The notes under the pieces were generated by a model. That model saw nothing but the letters and a program-made list of their open reading frames with translations, searched no databases and was not told where the DNA came from. Positions 13,821 through 57,620 of a stretch of DNA of 64,000 nt are shown in pieces (the first letter of the stretch is position 1; every line of letters begins with the position of its first letter). Origin of the DNA: Macrostomum lignano (Eukaryota); NCBI GenBank assembly GCA_002269645.1, contig NIVC01002900.1, positions 1 through 64,000 of the forward strand, given 5' to 3'. Made by a program: the position numbers and the translations under genes.

Positions 13821-13838
13821 TGTGTGTGTGTGTGTGTG

Positions 13839-37977: not shown

Positions 37978-40652
37978 CAACAACAACAAGGTACTGCTCC
38001 TGCCGGCCAGGCAGTAGCCAGAAAGGGGGGAGCAGTCAGAAAGCGCGTCTCTTGGCCATTGCCCTCAGGAAGTCGCATCCCCCTGCTTGGTCTGGGGCGC
38101 CAGCATCACTCAGAAGTTGGTCAGGGTATCGCACCGTTCGCCCTTGGCCTCGCCTCCGTGGTCCCTGCAGCTTGAGCAGCAGCACGTCGTGTAGCGGCTC
38201 AGGACAGCGGGCCTCCGACCAGATGACATGGCCAGCCAGTCGAAGTCGCCGCCCGCGCAGCAGGTCAGAAGGCCGCGTCAGGCGCGCCCTAGTGTAGAGC
38301 GCGGCATTGGTCTCGCTGCCTGGGCCGCTGCGCACTCCAAAGCTGCACGCAGCATTGCCACATGTGCAGCGTCCAGCTGCCTCTCCAAGGCGTCCGTCAG
38401 GGTCCAAGTCTCGGCGTTGTACAACAGGACAGTCTCGACGACTGCCTGAAACAGCCGAGCCTTGAGCCCGTCGTCCAGGGCCTCAGATTGGAGCACGGAG
38501 TGCACAGATCGAAATGCGGCCCAGGCCAGTCCTCGTCGTCTCTTCAGGTCATCAGCAACGTCCGGCACGGAACCGCCAAGGTACACAAAGCGCTCGCAGC
38601 GGGTAAGCATAAATGCATTCCCGGCAGCGTCTCGGTAATTGATCTCGGCCAGCAAGTCAGAGGGCACCGTGAACACTACCGTCTTCCGCGTGTTCAGCTT
38701 AAGGCCGACCCGCGACGCTGCCGCCGTCAGGCCATCAAGCAGCCGCTGGGCACCTTCAGCCGTCGATGAAAGTAGCGCGAGGTCGTCTGCGTAGCCGAGA
38801 ACGGAGAGCCGCTTCTCCGGGTGCCGCCGACTCGTGCGTCTTCTCAAAAGGAAGCCGTCATCCAGGTTGGGCAGGCCGGTTCTCAGCACCCAGTCCAGTG
38901 CCAGCACAAACAGAAAAGGCGCCAAAGTGTCACCCTGCAGCACGCCTGACGACGTGCTGAATTGGTCTGACAGTCCATCTGGCGTCATCACCGAAGCGGT
39001 CGTGTCCTGGTACATCGCCATGATGGCGGGAATCAGTTGCTCTGGTACATTGTACGCACGAAGCACGAGAGGCAGCGCGCCGCGAGCCAGCGAGTCGAAG
39101 GCCTTGAGGAAATCAATAAAGATCACCACGAGACTTGACTGATGGATGCGCGCCTCCTCGATGATGCGGCGGAGGGCTAGGATCTGCGTCACTGTGCCGC
39201 GATGTGGGCGGAACCCGTTCTGCTCAGTTCGCAGGAACTGGTCCAGCACAGGCTGTAACCGAGCCAGCAGCACCCGGTTGAACAGCTTCGCGGCGCAGGA
39301 CATAAGCAAGATCCCCCTGTGCTCCTCCTTCCGTGTCGTGCCTGGCTTCTTCGGGATCGCGACGATGTGCGCAGTTGTCCACTCGCGGGGCGCGGCATCT
39401 CCAGAAAGGACACCGTTCATCACACGAGCCACCTCAATGGCGACCCTTGTGACTCGCAGCACCTCGATAGGCACCTCGTCCGGTCCCGGGGTGCGACCTC
39501 CCGGCGCCTGGCGAGCGAACTGCACAACGTCGTTGCTGGTCACTGGCTGGGTGTTGAAATCTTCCTGCGACGGCAGCGCCGTCTCGAGCGGCAGTGGCAT
39601 CACTTCTGGCAGAGGCGGTGGCGGCGCGTTGACGATATCGGCGAAGAAGTCGCGTAGCTCATTTCTGCGCGCTTCTGGCGTGTCGCCGGTCAAGTTTAGC
39701 ACCGTTTTCTTCTTGCAACCAGTCAAGGCGTTGATTGTCGGCCATACGAGCCGATTCCGTTGGTCGAGCCCTGCGGAGGTGACGCTTCGGATGGCATCAT
39801 CAACAGCGGCTTGCTGCTGCCTGACATAAACGTCTGACAGGGCTTTCTTGGCCTCTGCCGTCGGTCTCCTGGACCGTCGCAGCCTCTCGACTGTCCGCCT
39901 CGCCTCTTGAACCTCCTTGTCATCCGCCCAGACAGGGAGACTATGGGCTGCAGATTTCATCAGTGGCAGAGTTTTGCTCGCTGCCATCGCTACTGCCGCG
40001 CTAATTTCAGAGTAGTTACCGGTGCTCGCAGACTCTCCCAGTGTGGTGGCGAACGCGTACGCGAACCTGCTGCGGGTGCTAGAATCTCGCAGAGCCCGGA
40101 AATAGCGGCGTGGGGGTCGCTTGGGCGGCCTGTACAGCGGATCCCGGATGCGAAGGTTGCAGAAAAGCAGGCAGTGGTCGGATCGGATGGACAGTGGGGC
40201 CATCGTGTCGCAGTCTGTCACCCGACTGCGCTCGCGGTTACGAACAAGAATGTGGTCGAGCTGGGCCCGGCGCGTCGTGGCGTTTCGGCACGCATTCCGC
40301 TTTCTTTGCTTACAACCAGCAAAAGTCGCCAAACGAAAAGCTGGCTTGCGGAAGCGCGTGTTCGCCGACACCAGATCTTGCCGTGACATAAGGTCCGCAA
40401 GCGCACTAGAGTTGCCATTCTGGCGCGGGGACACGAACGGGGAGCGCTGGGACCTCTCCGCGACAGCGTTGAGATCGCTAAGCACCGCCAAAGTGTCACG
40501 CATTGCGACCGACTCGAGCTGCTCTGACAGGAAATCAAAGAACTGCGCCTCATGCTGACGGGCAGCTGTCGGTGCATACGCGCAGAACAGCCGGGCGTTA
40601 CGGCCTCGCAGTCTCACATCCACACGCAAAAGCCGAGGTGACACGGGGACAC
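37978..40652 (-). mobile_element. 5'-truncated RTE-like LINE with a long APE-RT ORF (38278-40644)
   Basis: TSD AGTGCCAA at 37970-37977 and 40653-40660; (TTG)n tail; DLNA, LDHILV, SDH, QNGFR, DFLKAFDS, GVLQGD, YADD. Confidence 0.92.
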
Positions 40653-41619
40653 AGTGCCAATAATAAAAAATTGAACCAATTAAACCAATTGATTGTGCAA
40701 TCGATTTTAGTCAGTATCAGTCTTAGTTAAAGTTAACAAAATGATTTCGCAATCTAAATCAAACCTCCAATACACAGTGGCAGTTAGAAGTTGAAGCCCC
40801 CAAATTTATCTATTGTGTCTCGCAAAAATAATTACAATCTCTGCAGAAAGTTTAAAGTATAGACATTGTTTTTCAAATGCTGTGCTTTTAGTTTTCATGC
40901 TTAAAGCAAGCAACTTATATCAGCATTGAAAGATCTTTCCAGCAATATAAGTATCTTCTCTCAAAGTTTAAAACTCGAGGAACAGTTTGTGTGATATATA
41001 TAAGTCCCGAATTTGAGTTGGCAGCCGTCTATGAGGAGATACGCATTAAACCTGACCAGTTGATCAATCCACTCAGCTTTAGATATAAGATTCCAATAGT
41101 GTTAGCCTTCAAATGAAATTTTAAGATCAAATGGACCCTTTGATAATTAATTTTCTATATATATTCATATGAAGTTTTCTATTATTGTTGACCAACTTTT
41201 TTATGTTTTAGACTAATAAGCTAAAAAAACCTACTCTAAGTTGCAAACTGTAATATATAAATTATACTTTGTTATAACTATATAAACAATGTCTAAACTC
41301 TAGTAAAGACAAACCTAACAAGATGAATTTGAGAGTTTATTGTCCAAAGCTTTCCTTTTTCAAATAAAAAATGTATTAACTTCATCCTAAGCTTAAGCTT
41401 AATCATGTAATCCATTGTTTCAAGCTAAATAAACTGCTTGTCCAATAATAAAACAATTGTGACATTAGCAGCAGCCTACTCTTATCTAATAGCTGCAACA
41501 TGCTTTAAAGTTGGTGCAAAATTGTGCATATATTGTAACTAGGCTTTGTATACAAGCCATTATAATGGCAAATCCATATTTCCGAATATCTGCCACTGAC
41601 TCATTCTTGCAGCCAGAGA

Positions 41620-41967
41620 ATGCCACCCAAGAAGAGGCAGTCAACATCCAAGCCAAAGGCTGCTGGCAGCAAGCGGGCAAAGCTGGATGAGGCTGCATCA
41701 GAGAGTTCAGCTGGCAAGGAAAAGAAGCCTGCCAAGGCTGCTGCTAAGAAGGAATCGGATGCACCTGCAGCTGCGGCTGCTCCCAGCACTGCTGCAGCTC
41801 CCAGCACTTCAGCCACATCGCTGGAATGCCCCGCTGCTAAGGACGCTGAAGGCCGGCCCTGGAGCCTGAAGCTGGCCTCCTGGAATATCAATGGCCTGCG
41901 CGCCTGGCTGAAGAACAATGGCACTCGTTATCTGCTGGAGGAGGCGCCCTTCATCATTGGAGTCCAG
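41620..41967 (+). CDS. APEX1: AP endonuclease 1, exon 1
   Basis: MPPKKR NLS; LKLASWNINGLRAW; donor |gtgcga at 41968. Confidence 0.93.
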
Positions 41968-42181
41968 GTGCGAATCTTAGCATTGATTTGTTCTAGTTGG
42001 ATTATCCCCATTTGACCCAGTTTGCTTTTCAATGGAATAGAATATCCCATGTAGCAATTCTAATGGATTATCTTCATTGATGCGGTTGGATTATCCTGTG
42101 TAGATGCCATGGCGACTTGATTATCACAAGTTATCCCATTGGATTATCCCATCGATACAGATTGGATTATCACAAGTTATC

Positions 42182-45100
42182 TGTGATGCTCTGCTGGCAA
42201 CTCTAGTGCTTGATAAATAACGAAGCTCGTATCTTGCTTTGCTTGTTTATTTGGCTTTAGGACCACATTAATGCTAGCGGGGCTTGTAACAAGATTATGA
42301 AGCTAGGACTCTTATATATTAGGAAGGGATGAGGGAGGCGGCTTTTGGGCGCAGCGGCCATAGACTATTGTGAAGTGGCTCATGCACTGTCGTCAGAACG
42401 TGGACTCTTCTCCAAAGACTTAGAGCAGCGTTAATGCTGATGCACTTTATTGTTTTCTATATTGCCTTAAGGCTCAAACATGCTTTTAGGAAACAAACAA
42501 GAGAGCGGTGCTCTAAAATATACGAATGCCTGTAGAGAGATAGGACATAGACAAAAAGCGAAACTTGAAGGGAACGAGAGAGTCAGTAAGAGAATTAATA
42601 GTAGTACATCAATGCGCGCGTTGATAGGAGGCATTCTCTCAATGCACAACATGCCCCTTCTTCAGAAGCTGCTTACAACCATGACCTATATGTATGGGTT
42701 ATATCAATAAAGTATAAAATTTCATGAGTAACTTTTAGAGTGGGGAAACATATCTTATTCAGTTCATTGTTAACAGGCAAGGTAGTTATTGTTCACTGCA
42801 ACTCATGAGAATGCTATGGGGTGAATCTCTCGGGAGGTCGACGGTCTCGCAAACTTCGTCTCAGTTGGGCCTGCTGTTGGTCATCGGGCGGCACGTCTGC
42901 ATTGGATGTGGGAACAGCATCTTCATCATCGTCATCGGCGTCTGAAGGCTGGTTTTGAGGCGCCAGCTGATTAGTGCTAGCTAACTGCAACCGACTGTCA
43001 GCGAGAACCCACGCCGTGTTCCTGCCTGCAGTCATCACAAAGGTCGCGGGGGTGCCTGACGACGATTCATGTGGTTTGTAGTGGACCGTCTCCCCCTGAA
43101 CGAAAGGTGAAACTACGGGCACGCGCAATCGTCTGCCAAAGACCAATTCCGCCGGGCATTTACCTCGGGACATGGACGAATTGCGATGGTGGAAAAGTAT
43201 CTTCTGAAGGAAGCGGAGAAACTCCATGTGGGTGACGCGCTCGGTCCACGCTCTCAACGCCGTCTTGACAGTACGAACTGCCCGCTCCGCCGATCCATTT
43301 GCCTGAGGGTAGTACGGAGGTGACTCCAATTTCCGAACGCCGTTGGCGCGTAGGAATGAGGATAGGGGATCACCAGTAAACTCAGGTGCGTTGTCCGACA
43401 CAAGTAGTTCGGGTACACCAAATCGAGAAAACACGGTAATTAGGGACCGAACAACGCTATCTCCTGATCTGTCACGCGACGGAAAAGCTTCTATCCATCC
43501 TGAAAACGTATCGACGACAATTAGGATATTTCCAATGTCCTTTACATACGCCCAATCGATGTGGATCCGCTGGAAAGGAAAAGTAGATGCTGGCCAAGTG
43601 TCTCTTTCTTTGAGCAGTCGCGGTCGTAGCTGATTGCATCCAGAACATCGACGCACAAATTGTTCAACATCAAGCCGCATCCACATTAATGCTAGCGGGG
43701 CTTGTAACAAGATTATGAAGCTAGGACTCTTATATATTAGGAAGGGATGAGGGAGGCGGCTTTTGGGCGCAGCGGCCATAGACTATTGCACGAGCGTATG
43801 TCATGTCTCCCTCCAGAAAGAAAGAGTTGAACTGTCTCCGAACAATGTAAACTTTATGTCAGGAACTCAACAGATAACTAATTCAAATTCAGCGTGTCAG
43901 ATTTCAATTTGGTTACTCGTAATGTGTAGCTAATGCGGTTTTTTAGCAGTCACGAGGAGTAGCGGTCTGGTTGGCGACGCATCCGGGTGCTACGGCGAAT
44001 TCCACCTGCTTCTTGTTCTTGCGCGCCTTGGGTCGAATTGTCGCTGGGGTTCCCTGCCTCCGTGTTTGCGGGATCTCCTGCTATTGATACTTCATCGTCG
44101 TGTGGCAGTGGAGCAAGTTGGTTGTCGCTTGCCAAACGCAGTTCGCTCCCGTCCAACACGAAGGCCGTGTTGCGGCCTCGGTTCATCACGTATTCGACAG
44201 TGGAGGGTGGAACGTCCGAAGTTGGCTGATACAGAACGCGCTCGCCGTGGTTGAACGTGGAGACTACAGGAGCGCGTAGTTGGCGTCCGAAAACAATCTC
44301 AGCTGGCGTCTTGCCCCTACACGTGGATGAGTTTGGGTGATGAAACAGCAATCGCTGTAGATAGGGAACAAATTCAGCGTGTGTGGTTCGTTCGTTCCAG
44401 GCCCGCAGAGCTCGTTTGACTGTCTGGACTGCTCGCTCAGCCGATCCATTGGCCTGGGGATAATAAGTTGGGGATTCCATCTTCTTTATGCCATTTTGGT
44501 GCAGCCAGCTCCTCAGTGAATCGCTGACGAACTCCAGAGCATTGTCCGAAACTAAAAGTTCAGGCACGCCAAAGCGTGTGAAAACAGTTCTGAGGCATTT
44601 AATGATCTGATCTGTGGATCGATCTTTACAGGGAAAGGCCTCGATCCAACCAGAGTGAGAGTCGACTGCTATCAGGATGTTTCCAACATTCTTTACGTAC
44701 GCCCAGTCAACGTGAAGCTTTTAAAACCGGTTTTCAGTCGATGGCCAGGTGTCTTTGGTCTTCCTCAATCTGGGCCGCAGCCTGTTGCATACATCACACT
44801 GGCTGACAAATCGCTCGATGTCAGCGCGCATTCCAGGCCACCAGCAGGACAAGCTCATGAAGTTGAGTGTCGCCAGAGACCCAGAGTGAGTGTCATGCGC
44901 TGCACGAAAAGCTTCTTTCCGCAGTCTTGGCGGAATGTAGACCTGGCGACCCTTGAACAGTAAGCCGTCCTCGATAGTTAGGCATTGCGATACGGCCTGG
45001 AATGGTTTCTCAGCCTGAGAACAGCCAGCCCAGTTTCCCGAGCGAATTCGGTGCATCACTTTTTTGATGAGCTCATCCAACTCTAGCTCTGCGGCAACCC

Positions 45101-47931
45101 GGTTCTTGGGAATGACAGACGGCTCGAAGGCAACGCAATCAATGGCTTCGCAGACTTCCGCCGAATCGTTAGATGAGTCAGTGAAGCGTAGGCGAGAAAG
45201 CGCATCGGCATGTGGAATCTTCTCTCCTGGTATATAGCGTATGGTGTAGTCAAGGTGCATCATCGCGAGTACCCATCTGCTAATGCGAGCGGAGGTGTTC
45301 AGTGGCACCCCGCGAGACTGGCCGAAGAGCTGTTCGAGAGGCTTATGATCCGTCTGTATTGTAAAGTGGCGGCCCAGTTAATAGTGCTTCAGCCGGCTGA
45401 CTGCCCAAAAAACGGCAAGGGCTTCTCGCTCTATGTTCGAATAGTTTTGTTCGGCAGTAGAAAGACACCGAGAAATATAGATCACAGGATGGCCATCTTG
45501 CGTGACCACTCCTGCAAGCGCTCCCTTGGAGGCATCTGTGGTAAGAGTGAGTTCCTTTTCTAATGAGTATGGCTGGACTATGGGTTGAGAGGCAATCTCC
45601 GTCTTGAGTTGTCTGAAGGCTCGGTCACACTCAGCTGTCCACTGAAAGTTGGCATCCGCTCTGCGCAGTCGATTTAGCGGCTGGTTCTTTCCAGAGAAAT
45701 TGGGTACTAGCCTTCCAAAGAAGTTTATTAGACCAACAAATCGTTCCAGCTCCTTCTTGTCTTTGGGTTGTGCGATGCTGCGGATTTTCTCAACCAATCG
45801 ATCATCGAGTTGGATGCCAGCAGCAGAAATTTTAAATCCCAGAAATGATATTTCATCAGTCGCCTCGATGCATTTGCTTTCGTTGATGGTGACATGCTTT
45901 TCTGCCAGCCTAGTCTTCACAGCACAAAGTCTTTTCTGTAGTGAATCACTGTTTTCGGCGAAAACTAATACGTCGTCTTGGTAGATGAGAACGCCCTTTA
46001 GGTCTGACAGAATACTTTCCATCGCGCGCTGAAAAATAAAAGATGCATTCTTCATCCCCATCTGAAATCTTTTCACGCGAAATAATCCTTTGGATGTGTT
46101 AATTATTGAGAGATCCTGAGCAGCCTCGTCCAATTCGATCTGCCAATAGGCCGACCTCAGGTCTACTTTGGCGAACGTCTTGGCGTTTTTTAGTTTGGAA
46201 AATAGGTGCTCCACGCTAGGGATGGGATAGTCCTCTGACTTGATCTTTACGTTGACATGAACGCTGTAGTCAGCGCACATCCTTAGGGTTCCATCTTTCT
46301 TTTTGACCCAGACGACAGGAGAAGCATTGCTCACCGGGCCGTCAACTGGTTCTATCACGCCCAACTGCTGCAGCCTGTCCAATTCAGCGTTGATGGAGGA
46401 TTCCAGGGCAACAGGCACAGGACGCGCATGGCAAAACCTCGGAGTGGCATCAGCGATAGTCTCCATTTTGGCCTTGATGCCTTTAATCACGGGTAGGGCA
46501 TCCACGCTGTTACCGATGCTAGTGGAGCATGTGCTGTGGACTTGCGCTGAGTCCAATAAGTCACGGTCTAACAGACCGAATGTCTTAGAGGCCTGTACAA
46601 TGATTAGTTCAGCAGGGTGAAACTTGCCGCGAAGCTCAATGGCGGTTGATAACTTGCCGAGGACTTTAAGTGTGTGGCCATCGTAGGCTTGAAGACGGCG
46701 ATGACACTTCTGGAGGGCTGGGCGGCGGAGTGACTCTTAGAGAGTGCTTGAAATGACGCTCACCGCAGCACCGGTGTCTACTTGCATTGGGATTTGAGCA
46801 CCATTGATGACTATGTTTTCCAGTGTCGAGTCGATAGCGTGAATCGTGTCCGCGTCCCCAAGGTGAAGAAGGGACGTGGTATCTGGTTGCGGCGTGTCTG
46901 CGTTTGAGAGCTCCTCGACGTTGTGGAGCTGGCGTGGTCGGGAGGATCGACATACCGATGCAAAGTTGGTTTGGTTTTGAGCATTTGCTGCAGGTTTTTT
47001 CAAACGCTGGGCACTTTCCAGCAACATGGACTTGACCGCAGTAACCACACTGTCCAGTGCGTGGTCCAATCTTGCGCGGAGTGGTAAAGTTGTTCTTTGT
47101 AGCCAAAGAGCCATGGTGAATCTCCGGAACAGTTTCCTTTGGTGGGGAGGTCGTGAACGGCGTGGAGGCTTGTTTATACACGAACTCTTTCACTTGCTTG
47201 ATCTGGGCAACAAAATCTACGATTTCCTCGACCGACAGCTCCTTGATCTGCATAGCTTCTAGAACTTTTTGCTGTGTTGTGGGACAGTGCATGCCAGCGA
47301 CTAACGCCAGTTGAATCATGACCTCTTCTGGGCTTTCTGCCTCTTTCAGCGAATCGAATTTGCAATGTTGGGCGGCCTTTCTTAGGCGCGAGAGGTAATC
47401 CGGAAGAGACTCGTCGTGCTGTTGCCGGATGGTGTAGAAGCGAGTTCGCTGGGCAATGGTGATGCGCGTCTTTGGTTGAAGGTAACTTTGAATGGCGGCC
47501 TCGATTGCAGAAAACTCCAATTCGTCGATCTTCTTTTGGGCCACCAGAGATGTTAGCTTTTCAAGTGCTGGCAATCCGCATAGTGCTAGAAAGTTATCCG
47601 CAATTTCTCTGTTGGTGCCTTCATCTTTCCATTTCTTGGCTCGAGCGAGCGCACGGAATGCTGTTAGCCACGTCAGGGCGCGCTCAGGTTCTGAAAGTTC
47701 GATGCGTCCAAGTGCTTGCGACGCCATTGTGATGCTCAGCTGGCAACTCTAGTGCTTGATGAATAACGAAGCTCGTATCTTGCTTTGCTTGTTTATTTGG
47801 CTTTAGGACCACATTAATGCTAGCGGGGCTTGTAACAAGATTATGAAGCTAGGACTCTTATATATTAGGAAGGGATGAGGGAGGCGGCATTTGGGCGCAG
47901 CGGCCATAGACTATTGCACGAGTGTATGTCA
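42182..47931 (-). mobile_element. Ty3/Gypsy (Mag-like) LTR retrotransposon, antisense in APEX1 intron 1
   Basis: 204-bp TG...CA LTR at 47728-47931 with a split 3' LTR (42182-42368, 43680-43803); 5-bp TSD TTATC; gag with CCHC-like motifs, protease DTG, RT YQDD, RNase H, integrase; PPT at 43804-43814. Confidence 0.92.
42369..43680 (-). mobile_element. 3' part of a second, related Gypsy element (integrase, PPT, 283-bp LTR) nested in the first element's 3' LTR
   Basis: IHIDWAY, VVDTFSGW, VSDNAPEF, NGSAER. PPT gaagaagggg next to an LTR at 42369-42651 (TG...CA). Confidence 0.8.
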
Positions 47932-48185
47932 TTATCCCATTGGATTATCCCATCGATACAGATTGGATTATCACAAGTTATCCCATTGGATTATCCCATC
48001 GATACAGATTCGATTATCACAAGTTATCCCATTGGATTATCCCATCGATACAGATTCGATTATCACAAGTTATCCCATTGGATTATCCCATCGATACAGA
48101 TAGGATTATCACAAGTTATCCCATAGGATCTCATAGGATCATAGGATACAGACCCTATTGGATTATCAAGATATCACAAGTTATT
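47932..48185. repeat. 46-bp minisatellite, also present at ~42000-42181 and split by the LTR insertion
   Basis: ggattatcccatcgatacagattggattatcacaagttatcccatt units on both sides of the element. Confidence 0.85.
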
Positions 48186-48257
48186 CGATAAGATAATTGC
48201 ATTAATACCGTAAATCCTAATCCATAATCCCACTGCCCCCTGGCCGGGTCATCCCAG

Positions 48258-48657
48258 GAGATCAAGTGCCCCTCGGCCAAGGTGCCCCCGGAAGCCAGCA
48301 TTCCCGGCTACCACGCGCTGTTCAGCTCGGCGGACAAGGACGGCTACGCGGGCACGGGCATCTACAGCCGCGACAAGCCGCTGTCCGTCAAGGAGGGCAT
48401 CGGTGCCGCTAAGCACGACAGCGAAGGCCGGGTGATCACGGCAGAGTTCGAGAAGTTCTACTTTGTGACCGCCTACGTACCGAACAGCGGGCGCCAGCTG
48501 GCCAGGCTAAAGTACAGAGTGTCCGAATGGGACAAAGACTTTGCCGCCTACCTGCGCGGCCTGGACGCCGTCAAACCGGTGATTGTCTGCGGCGACCTCA
48601 ACGTTGCGCACCTGGAGATCGACCTGGCCAATCCCAAGACCAACCAGCGCACGGCGG
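48258..48657 (+). CDS. APEX1: AP endonuclease 1, exon 2
   Basis: (Q)EIKC, GYAGT, EGRVITAEF, AYVPNSG, CGDLNVAH; AG/GT borders in phase. Confidence 0.95.
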
Positions 48658-48949
48658 GTGAGGAAGCTGCGGCTTGGCTGAAGGACAGTCAGCATTAGGC
48701 ACAGATGGAGACAGGGAGGCTGGATTGGTGGGCGGAGCCTGGTTGCTGGAGGGCAGCACTGATAAACATGGCGAGTTACCTAATCTGGTGTATAAGGCAC
48801 ACAGAAAGGACTTGAACTATTATAGGGGTGATTTGGGCAGTAAGATATCGATATGCTAAAATAGATGGGGTTTGTGAGGCAGAAAGATGAGGTAGACAGG
48901 GAGGGAGAAGGTGAGATAGTGTCGTGGTGAGGTGGCCAGAAGATGATCA

Positions 48950-49450
48950 GGTAGGTAGACAGGAGATAGTGAGGTAGGCAGGAGATGGTGAGGTAGGCAG
49001 GAGATGGTGAGGTAGGCAGGAGATGGTGAGGTAGGCAGGAGATAGTGAGGTAGACAGAAGATAGTGAAGTAGGCAGGAGATGGTGAGGTAGGCAGGAGAT
49101 GGTGAGGTAGACAGGAGATAGTGAGGTAGGCAGGAGATGGTGAGGTAGACAGGAGATAGTGAGGTAGGCAGGAGATGGTGAGGTAGGCAGGAGATAGTGA
49201 GGTAGACAGGAGATGGTGAGGTAGACAGGAGATAGTGAGGTAGGCAGGAGATGGTGAGGTAGGCAGGAGATAGTGAGGTAGGCAGGAGATGGTGAGGTAG
49301 GCAGGAGATAGTGAGGTAGACAGAAGATAGTGAAGTAGGCAGGAGATGGTGAGGTAGGCAGGAGATGGTGAGGTAGACAGGAGATGGTGAGGTAGGCAGG
49401 AGATGGTGAGGTAGGCAGGAGATGGTGAGGTAGGCAGGAGATGGTGAGGG
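48950..49450. repeat. 19-bp minisatellite in APEX1 intron 2
   Basis: gtgaggtaggcaggagatg units. Confidence 0.92.
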
Positions 49451-49481
49451 ACTCAAATGATAAATTGGCAACTCCCCGCAG

Positions 49482-49747
49482 GCTTCACCAAGGAGGAGCG
49501 GGACAGCTTCTCGTCCATGCTGAGCTCCCTCGACCTGGTGGACACGTTCCGGCAGGTGCACCCGGACCAGACCAAGGCGTACACCTTCTGGTCCTACATG
49601 CGCAACGCCAGGGCGCAGAACATCGGCTGGCGGCTGGACTACTTCCTGGTGTCCAAGCGGCTGGCCGGCCGAGTCTGTGACAGCCTCATCCGGTCAAGCG
49701 TGATGGGCAGCGACCACTGCCCCATTGTGCTGCTGCTGAGCCTGTGA
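49482..49747 (+). CDS. APEX1: AP endonuclease 1, exon 3 (spliced protein 337 aa)
   Basis: GFTKEER, YTFWSY, GWRLDYFLVS, GSDHCPI; AATAAA at 49971. Confidence 0.95.
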
Positions 49748-50139
49748 CCTGCCGGGAACTGCTGGCTGCCCAGCAATGCATTTCACTTAATTTACTGCTA
49801 ATCAGTTGTAGCTTTTTTCGAGCTTGTAGCGTCGAAACTTCTATTGTTATTATTGTATGTGCTTTTAAACTTGACTCTCCGCATAGCAACTAACAATTCG
49901 AGTTCCGGTCTATTTTTATAACCATTTTCTCTTCATTTTCTAGTTTAAGTTCTCTGGTTGTTTTTACAAGAATAAATAATTAAAAAACCGGAAATTCCTT
50001 CGGCTTGGCGCCGCCGCTTGTTGTGCCAATTTCTGTACTTTTGGCCTTCTATTTCTCATCTGCTGAATCATATTTAAGCACTAATATTCAAATTTACAAC
50101 ACCGCAGCTCTGGAACTCGATTTCCCAATCCCACTTCAG

Positions 50140-51342
50140 CCGGCCGCCGTCTCCGCAGTTTTCTGGCGGCGCAGCCGCGCCCTCTTGGCGATTGGCGCCA
50201 GCTGCCGGTTGGCGCCACCGTCTGCCGCCGCCCACGTGCGGTCCGGCCGGCACTTGGAGCACGTGCTCTACCCCGCCCGCCTGCGGCCAAAGCGGCCCCA
50301 GCAGGCCGCGGAGAAGCGGCAGCAGCAGCAGCGGCTCCCGAGCGCGCAGTCGTCGCTGGTGACTCGCGAGGATCTGGAGGCCGCCTGGAATTGGCAGGCC
50401 GAAGGCACCGACCCGGCTGCTGCCGCCAGCCTCATCCTCAGCGTCGACTGTCGCGCCATGAGCTCCGAGGACCTCGCGCTCAGCCTCCGCGCCATCGCAG
50501 CGCCATACCATGCGCGCCACCTTGGGGCCGGCGGCGAGACTGCGCTAGCGGCACTGCGCGCCGATCCCCGCCTGACGCTGCTCGAGTGCGCGGCCGCGGC
50601 GCGCGCGGGCCACCTCGGCCCGGCGCAGCTGTGCCACCTCGTTCGAGACCTCTGCGTTGCGCTGCGCTCCGACCCGCGCGTCACCGCCGCGCCGCTGATG
50701 CTGCTCAACTCCGCCGTGAACGACCTGCCCCTGGCACGCTTGCTGGAGACGCTGTGGCGCCTGACGCAGGCGACCGCGCCGCCGCCTGGCCCTGAGCCCG
50801 CGCTGCTTCGGCGCCAAGCTCTGGTGCATCTTCGTGCGCGCCTGTTTGAGCTGGAGGCGCCGGCGCCAGATTGCGCGGCTGCAGCTCGAGCGGCGCTTCT
50901 CTTCCCCGGCGAAGGCGAACTGGAGCCGTACCAGACGGCGCGCCTTTTGTCCGCGGCCCGGCGTGGCGCCGCTCGCGCCTCCGCTCTGGACCCCGCGCTG
51001 GTTGGCGACGCGGCTCTGGGCTGGCGGCCCCTCCTGGCCTGGTCGCTGCCGCCGGCGTGCCGACACCTGAGCGAGTGCGCCGAGGGCATGTTCGAGCTGG
51101 GCGCCGAAGACCTGGACGGCCTGCTGAACTCTCAGGAGGCCCTGCTGGCCGCCCTGACTCAGCCGGTGCCGCCGGACGAGTCCGCGACCGAGGCCGCCGC
51201 GGTGGCCGGCGGGTTGCGCGACTTCTGCGAGCTGGGGCCGCGCGTCCTTGAACGGCTGCCCTCGGCCGCCCGGCCGGACGACTTGGCAACCAAATTTCAC
51301 TCTGACCGGCGGCGCCTCCTACCGCTGGCCATCGCTGACTAG
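50140..51342 (+). CDS. Unknown alanine/leucine-rich helical protein with a transit-peptide-like N-terminus and no genomic ATG
   Basis: GC-rich 400-codon frame starting in phase 0 after acceptor ttcag|; AATAAA at 51409. Confidence 0.7.
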   Translation, partial: PAAVSAVFWRRSRALLAIGASCRLAPPSAAAHVRSGRHLEHVLYPARLRPKRPQQAAEKRQQQQRLPSAQSSLVTREDLEAAWNWQAEGTDPAAAASLILSVDCRAMSSEDLALSLRAIAAPYHARHLGAGGETALAALRADPRLTLLECAAAARAGHLGPAQLCHLVRDLCVALRSDPRVTAAPLMLLNSAVNDLPLARLLETLWRLTQATAPPPGPEPALLRRQALVHLRARLFELEAPAPDCAAAARAALLFPGEGELEPYQTARLLSAARRGAARASALDPALVGDAALGWRPLLAWSLPPACRHLSECAEGMFELGAEDLDGLLNSQEALLAALTQPVPPDESATEAAAVAGGLRDFCELGPRVLERLPSAARPDDLATKFHSDRRRLLPLAIAD

Positions 51343-51514
51343 CCAGCCTGCCACTGGCCGCTGCAATGGCGTACTGTCCCACAGCATTTTCTTGTGTTAT
51401 TGAACCGTAATAAAATATAGCAAACAGAAATAGCGCTTAGATGCGCTAAGATGTACAAAATATTTCATGGCGAATCGTTACTTCCTGTTTCTTTATTGTC
51501 CTTGGGTTGGGTTG

Positions 51515-52042
51515 TAGATCTTCAGGCTGGATTATCGCCTCCTAGATCTTCAGGCTGGATTATCGCCCTAGATCTTCAGGCTGGATTATCGCCTCCTAGA
51601 TCTTCAGGCTGGATTATCGCCCCCTAGATTTTCAGGCTGGATTATCGCCTCCTAGATCTTCAATCTGGATTATCGCCCCCTAGATTTTCAGGCTGGATTA
51701 TCGCCCCCTAGATCTTCAGGCTGGATTATCGCCTCCTAGATCTTCAGGCTGGATTATCGCCTCCTAGATCTTCAGGCTGGATTATCGCCCCCTAGATCTT
51801 CAGTCTGGATTATCGCCCTAGATCTTCAGGCTGGATTATCGCCCCTTAGATCTTCAGGCTGGATTATCGCCCTAGATCTTCAGTCTGGATTATCGTCCTA
51901 GATCTTCAGTCTGGATTATCGCCCTAGATCTTCAGGCTGGATTATCGCCCCTTAGATCTTCAGGCTGGATTATCGCCCTAGATCTTCAGTCTGGATTATC
52001 GTCCTAGATCTTCAGTCTGGATTATCGCCCTAGATCTTCAGG
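51515..52042. repeat. 26-29-bp minisatellite (ctagatcttcaggctggattatcgcc)
   Basis: About 19 tandem copies. Confidence 0.92.
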
Positions 52043-52218
52043 CCGGCCATTGTCAGCTTACCAGAGCCTCACACTGACCCATGCATGTAGTGGCCGTATA
52101 ACCTGCTCAGGGGAGTCGGCGGAACGGGCAGTAATTGTAATAAAAAAGATAGACCCTCGCATTTCGTCTCACCTCGCACTGCCAGGTGCCCTTTCATGCG
52201 TCCCTGTTTCAGCCCAGA

Positions 52219-52893
52219 ATGTCAGCCGAAGTCCCAGAGCCGCAGCAGCAGCAGCCTCCGGAACAGCCCGGCAGCCAGCAGGGATTCTCCCTGGCCGAGC
52301 TGACCGCCAGCTTCAACCGCTGCCGCGCCCAGCCCGGCCTCGGCCTCGCCGCCTATGCCGACGGCTACGACCAGCTGCTGCACTTCCTGCGCAGCCTCAA
52401 CAAGGCCTTCTACTTCGTGGTGCAGGACGTGGACTCGAAGCTGCGCATCCTGCGCTCCCATATCGTCGGCCCGGAGGCCGCCAGCTTCTCCAGCATCGCC
52501 GGCATGCTGCAGTTCGAATCGGCCGGCGGCTTCGCTGGCAAGGAGAACGGCTCCCGCACTCTGCTGCGGCTGCACCGGGCGCTGCTCTTCCTTGTGCTGC
52601 TGCTGGACCGGCTGGTCAGCGCGCCAGCTGACAAGTCCATCTCCAGCATCGCCGGCGAGTCCTACAACGAGTCGCTGGCCAATCACCATCCCTGGGCGGT
52701 GCGCAAGGCGGTCGGGCTGGCGCTTTACCTGCTGCCATCGCGTGAGACCCTGCTGGCCAACATGGCGCAGCAGAACGCCTGCGATGCTGCCGGGGTGCGC
52801 CAGCTGGTGACCGAGGCCGTGCCCTGTCTGAAGGATGTCTACGACCAGACCCAGCGACTGTACAGCGAAGCCAAAGCTCTGGAGCTGCCTTGA
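52219..52893 (+). CDS. CPTP: Ceramide-1-phosphate transfer protein (GLTP fold), single exon
   Basis: DVDSKLRIL, NGSRTLLRLHRAL, HHPWAVRKAV; acceptor tttcag 6 nt before the ATG. Confidence 0.88.
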   Translation: MSAEVPEPQQQQPPEQPGSQQGFSLAELTASFNRCRAQPGLGLAAYADGYDQLLHFLRSLNKAFYFVVQDVDSKLRILRSHIVGPEAASFSSIAGMLQFESAGGFAGKENGSRTLLRLHRALLFLVLLLDRLVSAPADKSISSIAGESYNESLANHHPWAVRKAVGLALYLLPSRETLLANMAQQNACDAAGVRQLVTEAVPCLKDVYDQTQRLYSEAKALELP

Positions 52894-52959
52894 ACTGCAT
52901 TGCTGTAGTCTAATAGCTGCTCTTCATGCTTTCATAGACTCTGAACTAAGCAAACTGCT

Positions 52960-53464
52960 TCTAAGCACACTGTCGCTGAAGCATTAGCCTGAAGCATACT
53001 GCTTCTGAAGCTTAGCCCCTGAAGCACACTGTCCCGAAGCATTAGCCTGAAGCACACTGTCGCTGAAGCATTAGCCTGAAGCATACACTGTTCCTGAATC
53101 ATTAGCCCTGAAGCATACACTGTTCCTGAATCATTAGCCCTGAAGCATACACTGTTCCTGAATCATTAGCCCTGAAGCATACACTGTTCCTGAATCATTA
53201 GCCCTGAAGCATACACTGTTCCTGAATCATTAGCCCTGAAGCATACACTGTTCCTGAATCATTAGCCCTGAAGCATACACTGTTCCTGAATCATTAGCCC
53301 TGAAGCATACACTGTTCCTGAATCATTAGCCCTGAAGCATACACTTCCTGAATCATTAGCCCTGAAGCATACACTGTTCCTGAATCATTAGCCCTGAAGC
53401 ATACACTGTTCCTGAATCATTAGCCCTGAAGCATACACTGTTCCTGAATCATTAGCCCTGAAGC
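52960..53464. repeat. 32-bp minisatellite (gaagcatacactgttcctgaatcattagccct)
   Basis: About 12 near-perfect copies plus degenerate ones. Confidence 0.92.
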
Positions 53465-53996
53465 ACCGAATCCCGCTGTATCCAAAGCAGATGACGGACA
53501 AAAAGTACTATTACAATACTTACTATTTTCATAGACTTACTTAAACTCAGTTTATCATTCTGCTGTTTCTATTAGATATTTATGCATTGATCTGGTCCCA
53601 GTCGGACCGTCCCAAACTTCTTAATTCCCTTCTCTATGCTTTGTCTTTCCTTTAGTTCAGAAGCGGACACTTAATTTAAGCGCTTTGTCTGTTTTGTTAG
53701 TTCATTACGCCAATCTAAAAATAGCCACTGATGTTCTAAAAAAGATTATTTAACGCACTGCTTACTACTGCTGATTTGTTGATGTTATATTAACTTAATA
53801 GTAGAAAAGAGCGCATTGAGATGTGTTCCTGGATTATCCCACCTAGTCAAAAGCGGCGCTACTCCATGCAAATTCTACTATTAAAGTCATTGCCCGTGTG
53901 GACTGTGCGGAATTTGCTCTCAGCTTCTATGCTTAAACAGCTTCTGTGTTCTATTTTCATTGCTCACTTGAGCACTGCTCTAGGCAAAATCCAGAG

Positions 53997-55043
53997 TTGA
54001 GCTCTAGATCTCCTTGGCAGTCAGTTCATGCTGTGCCGCCTGCTCATCCACCCCAAGTTCCCAAATCCGGACTTGAGCTCTAGATCTCCTTGGCAGTCAG
54101 TTCATGCTGTGCCGCCTGCTCATCCACCCCAAGTTCCCAAATCCAGACTTGAGCTCTAGATCTCCTTGGCAGTCAGTTCATGCTGTGCCGCCTGCTCATC
54201 CACCCCAAGTTCCCAAATCCGGACTTGAGCTCTAGATCTCCTTGGCAGTCAGTTCATGCTGTGCCGCCTGCTCATCCACCCCAAGTTCCCAAATCCAGAC
54301 TTGAGCTCTAGATCTCCTTGGCAGTCAGTTCATGCTGTGCCGCCTGCTCACCCACCCCAAGTTCCCAAATCCGGACTTGAGCTCTAGATCTCCTTGGCAG
54401 TCAGTTCATGCTGTGCCGCCTGCTCATCCACCCCAAGTTCCCAAATCCGGACTTGAGCTCTAGATCTCCTTGGCAGTCAGTTCATGCTGTGCCGCCTGCT
54501 CATCCACCCCAAGTTCCCAAATCCAGACTTGAGCTCTAGATCTCCTTGGCAGTCAGTTCATGCTGTGCCGCCTGCTCACCCACCCCAAGTTCCCAAATCC
54601 GGACTTGAGCTCTAGATCTCCTTGGCAGTCAGTTCATGCTGTGCCGCCTGCTCATCCACCCCAAGTTCCAAATCCGGACTTGAGCTCTAGATCTCCTTGG
54701 CAGTCAGTTCATGCTGTGCCGCCTGCTCACCCACCCCAAGTTCCCAAATCCGGACTTGAGCTCTAGATCTCCTTGGCAGTCAGTTCATGCTGTGCCGCCT
54801 GCTCACCCACTCCAAGTTCCCAAATCCGGACTTGAGCTCTAGATCTCCTTGACAGTCAGTTCATGCTGTGCCGCCTGCTCACCCACTCCAAGTTCCCAAA
54901 TCCAGACTTGAGCTCTAGATCTCCTTGGCAGTCAGTTCATGCTGTGCCGCCTGCTCACCCACTCCAAGTTCCCAAATCCAGGCTTGAGCTCTAGATCTCC
55001 TTGGCAGTCAGTTCATGCTGTGCCGCCTGCTCATCCACCCCCA
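53997..55043. repeat. 76-bp minisatellite
   Basis: About 14 near-identical copies with no unique spacers. Confidence 0.95.
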
Positions 55044-55058
55044 ATTTTCCGGCTCAAG

Positions 55059-56723
55059 GCGAGGCCGGTCGCCGATCCCTGGGCGAGCAGCTGCTTCGGC
55101 GAAGACGAGGAGCCGGCGGCGGCGTCAGCGGACTCCGACGAGCTGTATCTGCTGCCCCGTCTGGAGGTCGAGCGGCTCTGCGACTCCCGGCTGGACCCGC
55201 CGCTTGACGCCTCTTCGACTGCGCAGCCGTCGGCGGATTCGGCGACCGCCTCGACTGCGGCGCTGTTGAATCGCCGTCGCAGGCTGGTGCGCGCCGACTC
55301 GCTGATTCTGCGCGATCCGCAGGCACGGCACGCCATCGACATGCTGGCGGCTGTGCGGCGCCTCCGGCCGCTGCAGCGGCGCCAGATGAAGTGGCGTCGG
55401 CAGCGTCTGCAGCAGCAGCGACAGGTGAGTAGCGCGTCGTTTGCGACGGTCTGCGTTGTAGTGTGACATTTGTGTGTCCTTTGTGACATTTATGTGTGAC
55501 TTGTGTGACATTTGTGTGTGCCCTTTGTGACATTTGTGTGTGTGTGCCCTGTGTGACATTGTGTGTGTGTGCCCTGTGTGACATTGTGACATTGTGTGTG
55601 TGACTTGTATGATATTTATGTGTGCCCTGTGTGACATTGTGTGTGTGTGCCCTGTGTGACATTGTGTGTGTGTGCCCTGTGTGACATTGTGACATTGTGT
55701 GTGTGACTTGTATGATATTTATGTGTGCCCTGTGTGACATTGTGTGTGTGTGCCCTGTGTGACATTGTGTGTGTGTGCCCTGTGTGACATTGTGTGTGTG
55801 TGCCCTGTGTGACATTGTGTGTGTGACTTGTGTGACATTTTTGACATCGAGCCCCTGCAAAAAGGTTGGAGACCATCTGTGATTGCGGCGGCGGCCCTGG
55901 CGACAGCTGCCTGAGGATCTGAAGGGCTGTGCAGCATGAGAATCCCAGTCGTATAAAAATCGCGGAAATCCAATATTTTTAGGCCGGACTGGCTGCTGCG
56001 CCGCCCCCCGTCGCCTCCACCGATCTCTTCGGAGGAGGCGGCCCGCCTGCGCGACCTGCTGTCCGTGCCGGCGCACACCGCCGATCCGCGCGTCCCCCTG
56101 CTGCTTGGCGCCACCTCCGCCGAGGACTGTCGGCGCCTCCTGCTGAGCAGCGCGGCCGCCACGGCGCTGCTGGCCGGCTTCGACACCGTCTCGGACGCGG
56201 CGCTGCGCTCGCTGGCTCACGCGCTCGACCTGTTCCTGTCTCAGGTAGCGGCCAGGATTCATGCCAGTTGGGATTCCCGTCAATTGGGATTCCCGTCAAT
56301 TGGGATTCCCGTCAGTTGGGATTCCCGTCAGTTGGGATTCCCGTCAGTTGAAATTCCCGTCAGTTCGGATTCCCGTCAGTTGGGATTCCTGTCAGATCCC
56401 ACCCAGATGGCAGAGTCTCCATTCTCCTATTCAATTTTCTGCAGGTTTGCCAGCGCATCGCCGACCAGCCGAGCGTCAGCGACTATCCAGACGGCCTGCA
56501 CAAGGCGCTGGCCGACTTCGGCATCACGGAGGCCTGGCAGCTGCGCCGCTGCTACGACCGCCTCATCACCGGCGGCCGGCGCCGGGCGCAGGACCGACTG
56601 GCCGCTCTGCTCGCCCAGCTGGCGCCGGCAACGCCTTCCGCCGTTTCGGCTGCTCCGGAGGCGGTAGCAACCGCGGAGGTGAAGGCGGAGCCGGAGGATT
56701 CGGCTGCGGGCCAGGGGCTGTGA
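55059..56723 (+). CDS. SUPT7L: SAGA/STAGA subunit SPT7-like (histone-fold); exons 55059-55424, 55983-56244, 56445-56723
   Basis: LLPR...DPPL, HAID...RRLR, CRRLLL...LAGFD...LRSLAHAL and FGI resemble SUPT7L. An apparent 1-nt frameshift lies near 56005-56010 (C run). No genomic ATG outside the upstream repeat. Confidence 0.72.
55462..55840. repeat. TG-rich ~24-bp intronic minisatellite
   Basis: tgtgtgacattgtgtgtgtgccc units. Confidence 0.88.
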
Positions 56724-56952
56724 GACTCGCTCATCTCGCTGCTGTTGTGTACAGAATTGACCTGAGATCCCCCCAGTTTGCTGTTCATTGCTTTGTTACG
56801 CAATACATTTGTATAAAATATACCGGCTCTGCTGGCGTTAGCCAAACTGCTGCCTGCGTGTGCGGTCCCATAAACTCTGCTGACACTGACGGCTTTCTCG
56901 TTTGTGACGCCATCCTGCCTGCTGTTTCCATCTGTCTGGATGGCAGGCAGAT

Positions 56953-57620
<668 letters not shown>

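What the first reader, a model, noticed from the sequence alone, without database searches (positions are those of the whole stretch)
41600..56723. Putative trans-spliced operon APEX1 - orphan - CPTP - SUPT7L, with two genes needing a spliced-leader AUG
Seen: four same-strand genes each have an AG acceptor at the CDS start (41612, 50139, 52212, 55058). Only ~160 nt separate the APEX1 AATAAA from the next acceptor. The orphan ORF and SUPT7L have no usable genomic ATG, yet both acceptors are in phase 0 with the ORF. Known: flatworm SL RNAs end in AUG that can serve as the initiator, and trans-splicing resolves polycistrons. Inference: SL-AUG gives M-PAAVSAVFWRRSR... and M-ARPVADPW..., the latter fitting the short SUPT7L N-terminus.
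Basis: partly seen in the sequence, partly recalled or inferred. Interest (0 to 1): 0.72.

Follow-up and report, generated by a model that had tools for sequence, protein, structure and literature searches.

The report
Flatworm trans-spliced gene cluster, leader-supplied start codons
This is a stretch of the flatworm Macrostomum lignano genome where four neighbouring genes look like a typical spliced-leader operon, and two of them have no start codon of their own and most likely borrow the AUG at the end of the spliced leader; both mechanisms are already known in flatworms, so this is a good example and not a new mechanism.

Summary
The window is Macrostomum lignano Mlig_3_7, contig NIVC01002900.1. 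The public RNA-seq-based annotation starts three of the four coding sequences on the first base after those AGs (50140, 52213, 55059). An APEX1 paralogue is flagged TRANSSPLICED. The M. lignano spliced leader (SL) ends in ATG.

Gene order APEX1, orphan, CPTP, SUPT7L-like is kept in three about 99% identical loci. Gaps from poly(A) signal to next acceptor are 163, about 269 and about 118 nt once satellites are subtracted, which is the published operon range. Gene names put APEX1 with the orphan in one transcriptional unit and CPTP with SUPT7L-like in another. A single four-gene precursor is not shown.

The orphan has no in-frame genomic ATG before codon 107, evolves like a coding sequence, and has no homologue outside M. 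lignano.

- This window does have an in-frame ATG at 54939, but it is unusable in both other copies.
- The window's SUPT7L-like copy has a 2-nt deletion in exon 2.
- Acceptor 41612 puts the SL AUG out of frame for APEX1.
- The orphan has a second, out-of-frame acceptor.

I could not reach any SL-junction reads. Verdict: a known kind of system; use of the SL AUG is inferred.

The parts
41610..41618 (+). APEX1 5' acceptor cluster: tandem AGs ending at 41612, 41616 and 41618. Only 41616 puts the SL AUG in frame (M-R-M-P-P-K-K).
   Evidence: The L003 copy's CDS is annotated from AGAATG, right after the second AG. Paralogue Mlig011745.g2 is flagged TRANSSPLICED.
41620..49747 (+). APEX1 coding region: exons 41620-41967, 48258-48657 and 49482-49747, with its own ATG at 41620. 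Intron 1 carries a nested LTR retrotransposon at 42182-47916.
   Evidence: The spliced translation of exons 41611-41967, 48258-48657 and 49482-49747 gives 340 aa, the length of the annotated product. Pfam Exo_endo_phos E=1.7e-32. Human APE1 structures E=3e-96. LTRs.
49971..50139 (+). APEX1 poly(A) signals (AATAAA 49971, ATTAAA 49979) plus a 163-nt repeat-free intercistronic region ending in acceptor CTTCAG at 50139.
   Evidence: About 99% conserved in L002 and L003.
50140..51342 (+). Orphan ORF: 400 codons with no genomic start codon. First in-frame ATG at 50458 (codon 107). SL-AUG reading gives M-PAAVSAVFWRRSR..., with an Arg-rich, acid-free, presequence-like N-terminus. Alternative out-of-phase acceptor at 50157-50158.
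   Evidence: annotated 5'-partial CDS starts at 50140; 14 synonymous and 7 nonsynonymous differences, variable sites by codon position 10/0/12, no indels in 3 copies; no homologue outside M. lignano..
51409..52212 (+). Orphan poly(A) signal (51409), a 28-nt satellite (51515-52043), a second AATAAA (52139) and the CPTP acceptor TTTCAG ending at 52212.
   Evidence: The same unique flanks occur in L003 and L002, with the satellite expanded to about 2.5 kb and 8.5 kb.
52213..52893 (+). CPTP (GLTPD1-type glycolipid transfer protein), single exon. Genomic ATG at 52219. The SL AUG is in frame two codons upstream (M-P-R-M-S-A-E...).
   Evidence: Pfam GLTP E=1.6e-33. Best solved structures are human GLTPD1/CPTP, E=1.3e-33, against GLTP at 6.6e-4. 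The CDS is annotated from 52213, or its equivalent, in all copies.
52967..55058 (+). CPTP 3' region and intercistronic region: 32-nt satellite 52967-53465, ATTAAA at 53880, 76-nt satellite 53987-55041, and acceptor CTCAAG ending at 55058.
   Evidence: The acceptor context is identical in L003 and L004.
55059..56723 (+). SUPT7L-like histone-fold gene: exons 55059-55424, 55983-56244 and 56445-56723. No genomic start codon before codon 95. The window copy lacks 2 nt after 56005 and is frameshifted as assembled. L003 and L004 give an intact 302-codon ORF from the acceptor.
   Evidence: The only solved-structure hits are human SUPT7L, E=0.28. Pfam Bromo_TP_like E=0.11. UniProt names the near-identical P0007 a BTP domain protein.

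Best explanation
The region is a Macrostomum lignano spliced-leader operon-type cluster. APEX1, a lineage-specific orphan, CPTP and a SUPT7L-like histone-fold gene lie head to tail. They are probably transcribed from upstream of APEX1 into one or two polycistronic precursors. Each gene is released by 3' cleavage and polyadenylation of the upstream gene and by trans-splicing of the single 35-nt SL (which ends ...UUGCAUG) onto the acceptors at 41612/41616, 50139, 52212 and 55058.

The SL ends in AUG and three of these acceptors are in phase 0. So the SL AUG is the first AUG of the orphan, CPTP and SUPT7L-like mRNAs and is in frame. For the orphan and the SUPT7L-like gene it is the only AUG that can give the full-length protein.

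Shown: the gene identities, the acceptor sequences and phases, the absence of a usable genomic ATG, conserved synteny, the repeat-adjusted spacing, and the match to annotated gene starts. Inferred: actual SL addition at each site, a common promoter, and initiation at the SL AUG.
For: - Source: Mlig_3_7 contig NIVC01002900.1.
- The SL sequence ends in ATG, the trans-splice motif is [T/C]TNCAG, and operon gaps peak near 100 bp after repeats are subtracted, with a 1-kb threshold.
- The annotation pipeline cuts transcriptional units at mapped SL-read peaks. Its 5'-partial CDSs start at 50140, 52213 and 55059, at the same CPTP site in all copies, and at the same SUPT7L-like site in L004.
- APEX1 paralogue Mlig011745.g2 is flagged TRANSSPLICED.
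- Shared name prefixes: APEX1 = Mlig011745.g2 and orphan = Mlig011745.g1; CPTP = Mlig000594.g1 and SUPT7L-like = Mlig000594.g2/g5/g8. The two members of each pair are unrelated in sequence, so I read a shared prefix as both being cut from one assembled transcriptional unit (naming rule).
- Gene order is conserved in three loci, with no opposite-strand gene in between.
- Gaps are 163, about 269 and about 118 nt after removing satellites. The loci differ only in satellite length: 0.5, 2.5 and 8.5 kb.
- The orphan frame has no ATG from 49984 to 50458. Its substitution pattern is that of a coding sequence, Fisher p=2.5e-4. It has 6 Arg/Lys and no acidic residues in its first 40 residues.
- The SUPT7L-like frame 0 runs from the acceptor to the stop in L003 and L004. 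Its first genomic ATG (codon 95) falls inside the segment that aligns with human SUPT7L from residue 65.
- The SL AUG is known to serve as initiator in flatworms (Cheng et al. 2006, cited). It is regarded as a likely start codon in Macrostomum.
Against: - No SL-containing read or transcript could be examined. The protein collection holds no transcript-derived M-PAAVS... or M-PRMSAE... product.
- Name prefixes give two units, not one. Nothing links the orphan to CPTP except spacing and synteny.
- The 55058 acceptor is AAG, not the CAG of the published motif.
- The L003 SUPT7L-like CDS is annotated from 20 nt further downstream.
- The orphan CDSs in L002 and L003 start after the second, out-of-phase AG, so acceptor use may be mixed.
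- The window APEX1 CDS is annotated from 41611, 2 nt before the exon start expected from the AG at 41612.
- TATA-like strings (TATTTAAG near 50072, TAATAAAAAAG at 52137) precede two of the acceptors, so separate promoters with short outrons cannot be excluded from sequence.
- Substitutions in SUPT7L-like exon 1 show no third-position bias: 1/2/2.
Confidence: 0.62

Rival explanations
1. There are four, or two plus two, independently promoted genes. Each is trans-spliced after a short outron, so the cluster is not one operon. The SL AUG would still be used for the two ATG-less ORFs.
For: Most trans-spliced M. lignano genes are not in operons. Name prefixes show only pairwise units. TATA-like strings lie 60-70 nt upstream of acceptors 50139 and 52212. 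The neighbouring minus-strand gene shows that a recognisable TATA-like box about 30 nt before the annotated 5' end does occur in this region.
Against: The 163-nt gap between the APEX1 poly(A) signal and the orphan acceptor leaves little room for a promoter. APEX1 and the orphan share a transcriptional-unit prefix, as do CPTP and SUPT7L-like. The repeat-adjusted gaps fall in the operon mode of the published distribution.
Confidence: 0.22
2. The orphan and the SUPT7L-like gene are trans-spliced, but translation starts at the first genomic in-frame AUG (orphan codon 107, SUPT7L-like codon 95) or at a non-AUG codon. The upstream open frame would then be untranslated leader.
For: The SL AUG has a weak context, with U at -3 (from the SL sequence), so leaky scanning is plausible. 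SUPT7L-like exon 1 shows no third-position bias. Both proteins keep their predicted helical cores downstream of those AUGs.
Against: The SL AUG would be the first AUG, in frame and without a stop, so scanning ribosomes should use it at least in part. Orphan codons 1-106 have no indel and no second-position change in three copies. Codon 95 of SUPT7L-like lies inside the stretch that aligns with human SUPT7L. Initiation at the SL AUG has been shown in other flatworms.
Confidence: 0.12
3. The orphan ORF is not a gene. It would be a chance open frame in 63% GC DNA, part of a long APEX1 3' region or a non-coding transcript.
For: There is no homologue in 1.84 billion representative proteins and no Pfam family. 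The AlphaFold model is poor. GC-rich M. lignano exons can be open in several frames; the SUPT7L-like transcript is open in three.
Against: This frame is open for 400 codons, while the five others reach 101-287. Differences among three copies are 14 synonymous to 7 nonsynonymous, with none at second codon positions and no indel. APEX1 has its own poly(A) signals upstream. The public annotation cuts a separate gene here.
Confidence: 0.04

Closest known systems
Macrostomum lignano SL trans-spliced operons (Wudarski et al. 2017, PMC5730564; Ustyantsev and Berezikov 2021, PMC8629364)
   Same: Same organism and same single 35-nt SL. Same-strand genes, a [T/C]TNCAG acceptor at three of four sites, intergenic gaps near 100-270 nt once satellites are removed, and satellites that expand inside the gaps. 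The first gene is itself trans-spliced. APEX1 is a conserved, neoblast-enriched gene, as those papers report for trans-spliced genes.
   Different: This cluster is not described in the text of those papers that I could read. The published names split it into two transcriptional units. Neither paper discusses genes that depend on the SL AUG.
Flatworm SL 3'-terminal AUG used as initiator methionine (Cheng, Cohen, Ndegwa and Davis 2006, J Biol Chem 281:733; cited in PMC9851317 and PMC12582326)
   Same: The SL ends in AUG. The acceptor is in phase with an ORF that has no AUG of its own. The predicted protein starts with the SL-encoded Met.
   Different: That work was done in Schistosoma mansoni with cDNAs and translation assays. 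Here the case is in a free-living macrostomid and rests on genome sequence, paralogue comparison and annotation only.
Caenorhabditis elegans operons resolved by SL2
   Same: Polycistronic precursor, about 100-nt intercistronic regions, and coupling of upstream 3'-end formation with downstream trans-splicing.
   Different: M. lignano has one SL and no SL1/SL2 division. The nematode SLs do not end in AUG. The intercistronic regions here tolerate kilobases of satellite DNA.
slORFs (ORFs created by SL addition; slORFfinder, PMC9851317)
   Same: The ORF is defined only after the SL is joined to the recipient exon.
   Different: In that study the slORFs mostly use NUG codons inside the SL and are alternative to an annotated ORF. 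Here the SL AUG would start the main and only long ORF.

Membership tests
M. lignano SL operon (criteria of PMC8629364) | Adjacent genes on the same strand with no opposite-strand gene between them | tested here: met
   Gene calls on the contig and on two paralogous loci. The next gene downstream is on the minus strand.
M. lignano SL operon (criteria of PMC8629364) | Repeat-adjusted intergenic distance below 1 kb | tested here: met
   163, about 269 and about 118 nt from poly(A) signal to acceptor after subtracting satellite arrays. The same unique flanks occur in L002 and L003.
M. lignano SL operon (criteria of PMC8629364) | Downstream genes carry the SL (SL-containing reads at the acceptor) | tested here: inconclusive
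Indirect support: annotated gene and CDS starts fall on AG+1 at 50140, 52213 and 55059, the pipeline cuts at SL peaks, and an APEX1 paralogue is flagged TRANSSPLICED. The start differs in some copies.
M. lignano SL operon (criteria of PMC8629364) | One promoter and one polycistronic precursor | not testable with these tools
   The only evidence is shared transcriptional-unit name prefixes for APEX1 with orphan and for CPTP with SUPT7L-like.
SL-AUG-initiated ORF (Cheng et al. 2006 type) | The SL ends in AUG | tested here: met
   The published M. lignano SL is CGGTCTCTTACTGCGAAGACTCAATTTATTGCATG. No SL copy lies in the window.
SL-AUG-initiated ORF (Cheng et al. 2006 type) | Acceptor in phase 0 with the ORF and no stop in between | tested here: met
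   Met for 50139, 52212 and 55058. The phase is conserved in L002, L003 and L004.
SL-AUG-initiated ORF (Cheng et al. 2006 type) | No usable genomic AUG for the full-length protein | tested here: met
   Orphan: none from the upstream stop at 49984 to codon 107. SUPT7L-like: the first downstream ATG is codon 95. The upstream ATG at 54939 is followed by a TGA in L003 and is out of frame in L004.
SL-AUG-initiated ORF (Cheng et al. 2006 type) | Translation shown to start at the SL AUG | not testable with these tools
   This needs N-terminal proteomics, initiation-site ribosome profiling or a reporter.
APEX1 / exonuclease III family AP endonuclease | Full-length Exo_endo_phos domain with close similarity to human APE1 | tested here: met
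   Pfam E=1.7e-32. Human APE1 structures E=3e-96 over residues 19-337.
CPTP (GLTPD1) | GLTP fold that is closer to CPTP than to GLTP | tested here: met
   Pfam GLTP E=1.6e-33. GLTPD1 structures E=1.3e-33, against GLTP at 6.6e-4.
SUPT7L (STAF65 gamma) | BTP/histone-fold domain and specific similarity to SUPT7L | tested here: inconclusive
   The only solved-structure hits are human SUPT7L, but at E=0.28. Pfam Bromo_TP_like scores E=0.11, below its cut-off. UniProt names P0007 a BTP domain protein. The AlphaFold model is too poor to compare.

The most novel reading that the evidence does not exclude
Choice between two trans-splice acceptors 19 nt apart at the orphan gene (50139 in phase, 50158 out of phase) could act as a translational on/off switch. 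The first gives a 401-residue, possibly mitochondrial, lineage-specific protein that starts at the SL AUG. The second makes the SL AUG open a 68-codon overlapping out-of-frame ORF, and the main frame is left with no start before codon 107. APEX1 shows a similar pair: 41612 is out of phase and 41616 is in phase. If so, the phase of the SL AUG would be a regulated feature of flatworm operon genes. It would also be a systematic source of coding sequences labelled 'partial' or annotated in the wrong frame in M. lignano.
Probability: 0.15. Interest if true: 0.6.

Novelty: new member of a known kind. Interest (0 to 1): 0.3.

Why it matters
The mechanisms are established: SL operons in M. lignano and the flatworm SL AUG as initiator. 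So this does not change the field.

It has practical value in three ways:
- It is a clean, testable example in a flatworm that can be made transgenic, of genes that cannot make their protein without the SL-supplied AUG.
- It shows that the public annotation labels such genes 'partial', and that for the SUPT7L-like gene it follows wrong GC-rich reading frames.
- It flags a lineage-specific orphan, co-arranged with the neoblast-enriched APEX1, whose predicted N-terminus exists only after trans-splicing.

Tried and rejected
- Direct RNA evidence: the protein collection holds only genome-derived or older gene-model products for these genes. There was no transcript-derived M-PAAVS... or M-PRMSAE... 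protein to trace to an SL-bearing contig.
- Supplementary tables: only one of the papers held a relevant row, the APEX1 paralogue.
- Orphan identity: no Pfam family. Nothing outside M. lignano in the word-indexed search or the full HMMER search of 1.84 billion representatives. The one extra hit, P0015, is a garbled fused M. lignano gene model.
- Structure: single-sequence AlphaFold models of the orphan (pLDDT 44) and of the SUPT7L-like protein P0007 (pLDDT 46) were too poor for fold comparison, so I ran no fold search.
- SL gene in the window: none.
- The upstream in-frame ATG at 54939 as the SUPT7L-like start: rejected, because it is not usable in either other copy.
- A single fixed offset between annotated starts and acceptors: rejected, because the window APEX1 start (41611) and the L002/L003 orphan starts do not fit one rule.
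- An upstream plus-strand gene that would extend the operon: none. The 10 kb upstream is retrotransposon sequence, and L002 and L003 have no annotated gene within 7 kb.
Full report
**Source and setting.** The orphan ORF matched a protein on contig NIVC01002900.1 of assembly GCA_002269645.1. This is Macrostomum lignano Mlig_3_7, and window coordinates equal record coordinates. M. lignano has a single 35-nt spliced leader (SL), CGGTCTCTTACTGCGAAGACTCAATTTATTGCATG, ending in ATG. About 30% of its genes are trans-spliced and about 15% are assigned to operons. The enriched trans-splice acceptor motif is [T/C]TNCAG. Operon intergenic distances peak near 100 bp once repeats are subtracted, and the authors use a 1-kb threshold (PMC8629364).

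**The observation.**
The first three fit the published motif. The fourth is AAG.
- The APEX1 AATAAA (49971) lies 163 nt before 50139.
- The orphan frame is open from 49984. It has no in-frame ATG until 50458, which is codon 107.
- Joining ATG to each exon start gives in-frame reading for the orphan (401 codons), CPTP (M-P-R-M-S-A-E...) and SUPT7L-like exon 1.
- For APEX1, acceptor 41612 puts the SL AUG out of frame and gives a 26-codon overlapping ORF. The AG four bases on (41616) is in frame.

**Independent check against the public annotation.** The Mlig_3_7 gene set was built by assembling transcriptional units from RNA-seq. These units were then cut at peaks of mapped, SL-trimmed reads and at poly(A) sites, and ORFs were called afterwards (PMC5730564).
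- The resulting NCBI coding sequences on this contig start at 41611, 50140, 52213 and 55059. They are 5'-partial because no ATG is present.
- The CPTP start is the same in all copies.
- The SUPT7L-like start in L004 (4001, in a +2 frame) implies a transcript that begins at the same acceptor.
- The L003 APEX1 coding sequence starts right after the second AG.
- APEX1 paralogue Mlig011745.g2 is listed as TRANSSPLICED and stringently neoblast-enriched in a supplementary table of PMC5816591.
- Exceptions: the window APEX1 start is 2 nt upstream of the exon expected from 41612. The L003 SUPT7L-like start is 20 nt downstream. The L002 and L003 orphan coding sequences start just after a second AG at the equivalent of 50158.

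**Operon evidence.** Three loci in the assembly are about 99% identical in the genes: the window, L002 plus L004, and L003. All keep the order APEX1, orphan, CPTP, SUPT7L-like, followed by a minus-strand gene.
- The gaps differ only in satellite length. The 28-nt array between the orphan and CPTP is 0.53 kb here, about 2.5 kb in L003 and 8.5 kb (307 copies) in L002, with the same unique flanks.
- After subtracting satellites, the distances from poly(A) signal to acceptor are 163, about 269 and about 118 nt. This is the pattern described for M. lignano operons.
- Names: in L002, APEX1 is Mlig011745.g2 and the orphan is Mlig011745.g1. CPTP is Mlig000594.g1. The SUPT7L-like gene is Mlig000594.g2 in L002, g5 in the window and g8 in L003. 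The prefix denotes a cluster of transcriptional units. The two genes of each pair are unrelated in sequence, so I infer that a shared prefix means both were cut from one assembled unit.
- This supports two dicistronic precursors. The authors note that units tend to break in repeat-rich gaps, so one four-gene precursor is possible but not shown.
- Upstream of APEX1 there is about 1 kb of AT-rich sequence and then retrotransposons. L002 and L003 have no annotated gene within 7 kb upstream.

**The genes.**
- APEX1 is certain: Pfam E=1.7e-32 and human APE1 E=3e-96.
- CPTP is well supported: GLTPD1 structures E=1.3e-33, against GLTP at 6.6e-4.
- The orphan has no family and no relative outside M. 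lignano in either large search. It still behaves as a coding sequence:
  - Its frame is open for 400 codons, while the other five frames reach 101-287.
  - It has no indel among the three copies.
  - The copies differ by 14 synonymous and 7 nonsynonymous changes (Fisher p=2.5e-4).
  - Variable sites fall 10/0/12 by codon position.
  - With the SL Met, its first 40 residues have six Arg/Lys and no acidic residue. This resembles a mitochondrial presequence. That is my inference; no targeting predictor was available.
- The SUPT7L label is weak but consistent. The only solved-structure matches are human SUPT7L (E=0.28, query 91-249 to chain 65-237). Pfam Bromo_TP_like scores E=0.11. UniProt names the near-identical P0007 a BTP domain protein.

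**Corrections for the SUPT7L-like gene.**
- In L003 and L004, frame 0 from the acceptor runs through exon 1 (366 nt), exon 2 (264 nt) and exon 3 to the stop, giving 302 codons.
- In the window, exon 2 is 262 nt. Two bases are missing after 56005 in a C/G-rich run, so exon 1 and the histone-fold frame are out of register as assembled. This is either an assembly error or a disabled copy.
- The NCBI products for this gene (353, 309 and 332 aa) run partly or wholly in wrong GC-rich frames.
- The window has an in-frame ATG at 54939 inside the 76-nt satellite. L003 has an in-frame TGA after it, and in L004 a 1-nt indel removes it from the frame. It is therefore not a conserved start.
- The first downstream ATG is codon 95, inside the stretch that aligns with human SUPT7L.
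- Variable sites over the whole coding sequence fall 2/2/6 by codon position, but exon 1 alone shows no bias.

**Mechanism.** The best reading is a standard flatworm SL cluster. The SL AUG is the first in-frame AUG for the orphan, CPTP and SUPT7L-like mRNAs, and it is indispensable for the full-length orphan and SUPT7L-like proteins. Initiation at the SL AUG was shown for Schistosoma mansoni by Cheng et al. 2006 (as cited in PMC9851317 and PMC12582326). A Macrostomum genome paper notes that the SL's final ATG is probably a start codon (PMC10468722). The M. lignano trans-splicing study I read does not address the point.

**Limits.** I saw no SL-junction reads, 5'-cap data or peptides. TATA-like strings upstream of two acceptors leave room for separate promoters. 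The second orphan acceptor (50158) would put the SL AUG out of frame and give a 68-codon overlapping ORF. Acceptor choice could therefore matter for translation, but that is speculation.

**Verdict.** What it describes is a member of a known kind, in a genome where such clusters are already annotated.

Noticed in passing
window 42182-47916 (minus strand), inside APEX1 intron 1: A nested LTR retrotransposon with 189-nt LTRs at 42182-42370 and 47728-47916 (98% identical), a partial third LTR near 43600-43788, and long minus-strand ORFs. APEX1 spans about 8.1 kb here against 2.0-2.3 kb in L002 and L003, so those copies do not appear to have room for it and it looks like a copy-specific insertion. 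It sits inside a 46-nt satellite.
   Followed up: partly
window 38278-40644 (minus strand), also 30490-32764: LINE-like ORFs (endonuclease plus reverse transcriptase) fill the 10 kb upstream of APEX1. L003 shares the window's upstream sequence back to about 40555, inside the 5' part of the 38278-40644 ORF.
   Followed up: partly
window 47932-48129, 42085-42222, 51515-52043; L002 11355-19864; L003 about 11350-13870: Distinct satellites (46-nt and 28-nt units) share a GGATTATC core. The 28-nt array between the orphan and CPTP varies from 0.53 kb to about 2.5 kb to 8.5 kb among three otherwise about 99% identical loci.
   Followed up: partly
window 55059-56875; L003 16097-17762; L004 4001-5492: The NCBI coding sequences of the SUPT7L-like gene (PAA54478.1 at 353 aa, PAA53335.1 at 309 aa, PAA62980.1 at 332 aa) follow wrong GC-rich frames for part or all of their length. 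The frame with the histone fold gives 302 codons from the acceptor in L003 and L004.
   Followed up: yes
window 56005/56006: A 2-nt deletion relative to both other copies, in a C/G-rich run of SUPT7L-like exon 2. It is either a frameshifted copy or an assembly error.
   Followed up: partly
window 50157-50158: A second AG acceptor 19 nt inside the orphan ORF. The L002 and L003 coding sequences are annotated from just after it. With this site the SL AUG opens a 68-codon out-of-frame ORF.
   Followed up: partly
window 57897-59702 (minus strand): The neighbouring gene has CATAAAAG about 30 nt upstream of its annotated 5' end and a signal-peptide-like start, MPRLPTAAAFGLLLLLLG. It looks conventionally promoted and not trans-spliced.
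   Followed up: no
proteins P0002, P0009, P0015, P0006 (older M. lignano gene models): Older gene models fuse neighbours of this cluster: P0002 joins APEX1 and the orphan, P0009 joins CPTP and SUPT7L-like, and P0015 joins the orphan, CPTP and SUPT7L-like. P0006 (2871 aa) clusters with both APEX1 and the orphan, but I did not inspect its sequence. UniProt names two of these models after unrelated families (HECT domain, BUG/TctC).
   Followed up: partly
window 48953-49449, 52967-53465, 53987-55041, 55471-55847, 56265-56395, 56951-57620: Tandem arrays with 19-, 32-, 76-, about 25-, 16- and 4-nt units lie in the introns, 3' regions and gaps of the cluster. The SUPT7L-like acceptor lies only 17 nt after the end of the 76-nt array.
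   Followed up: no
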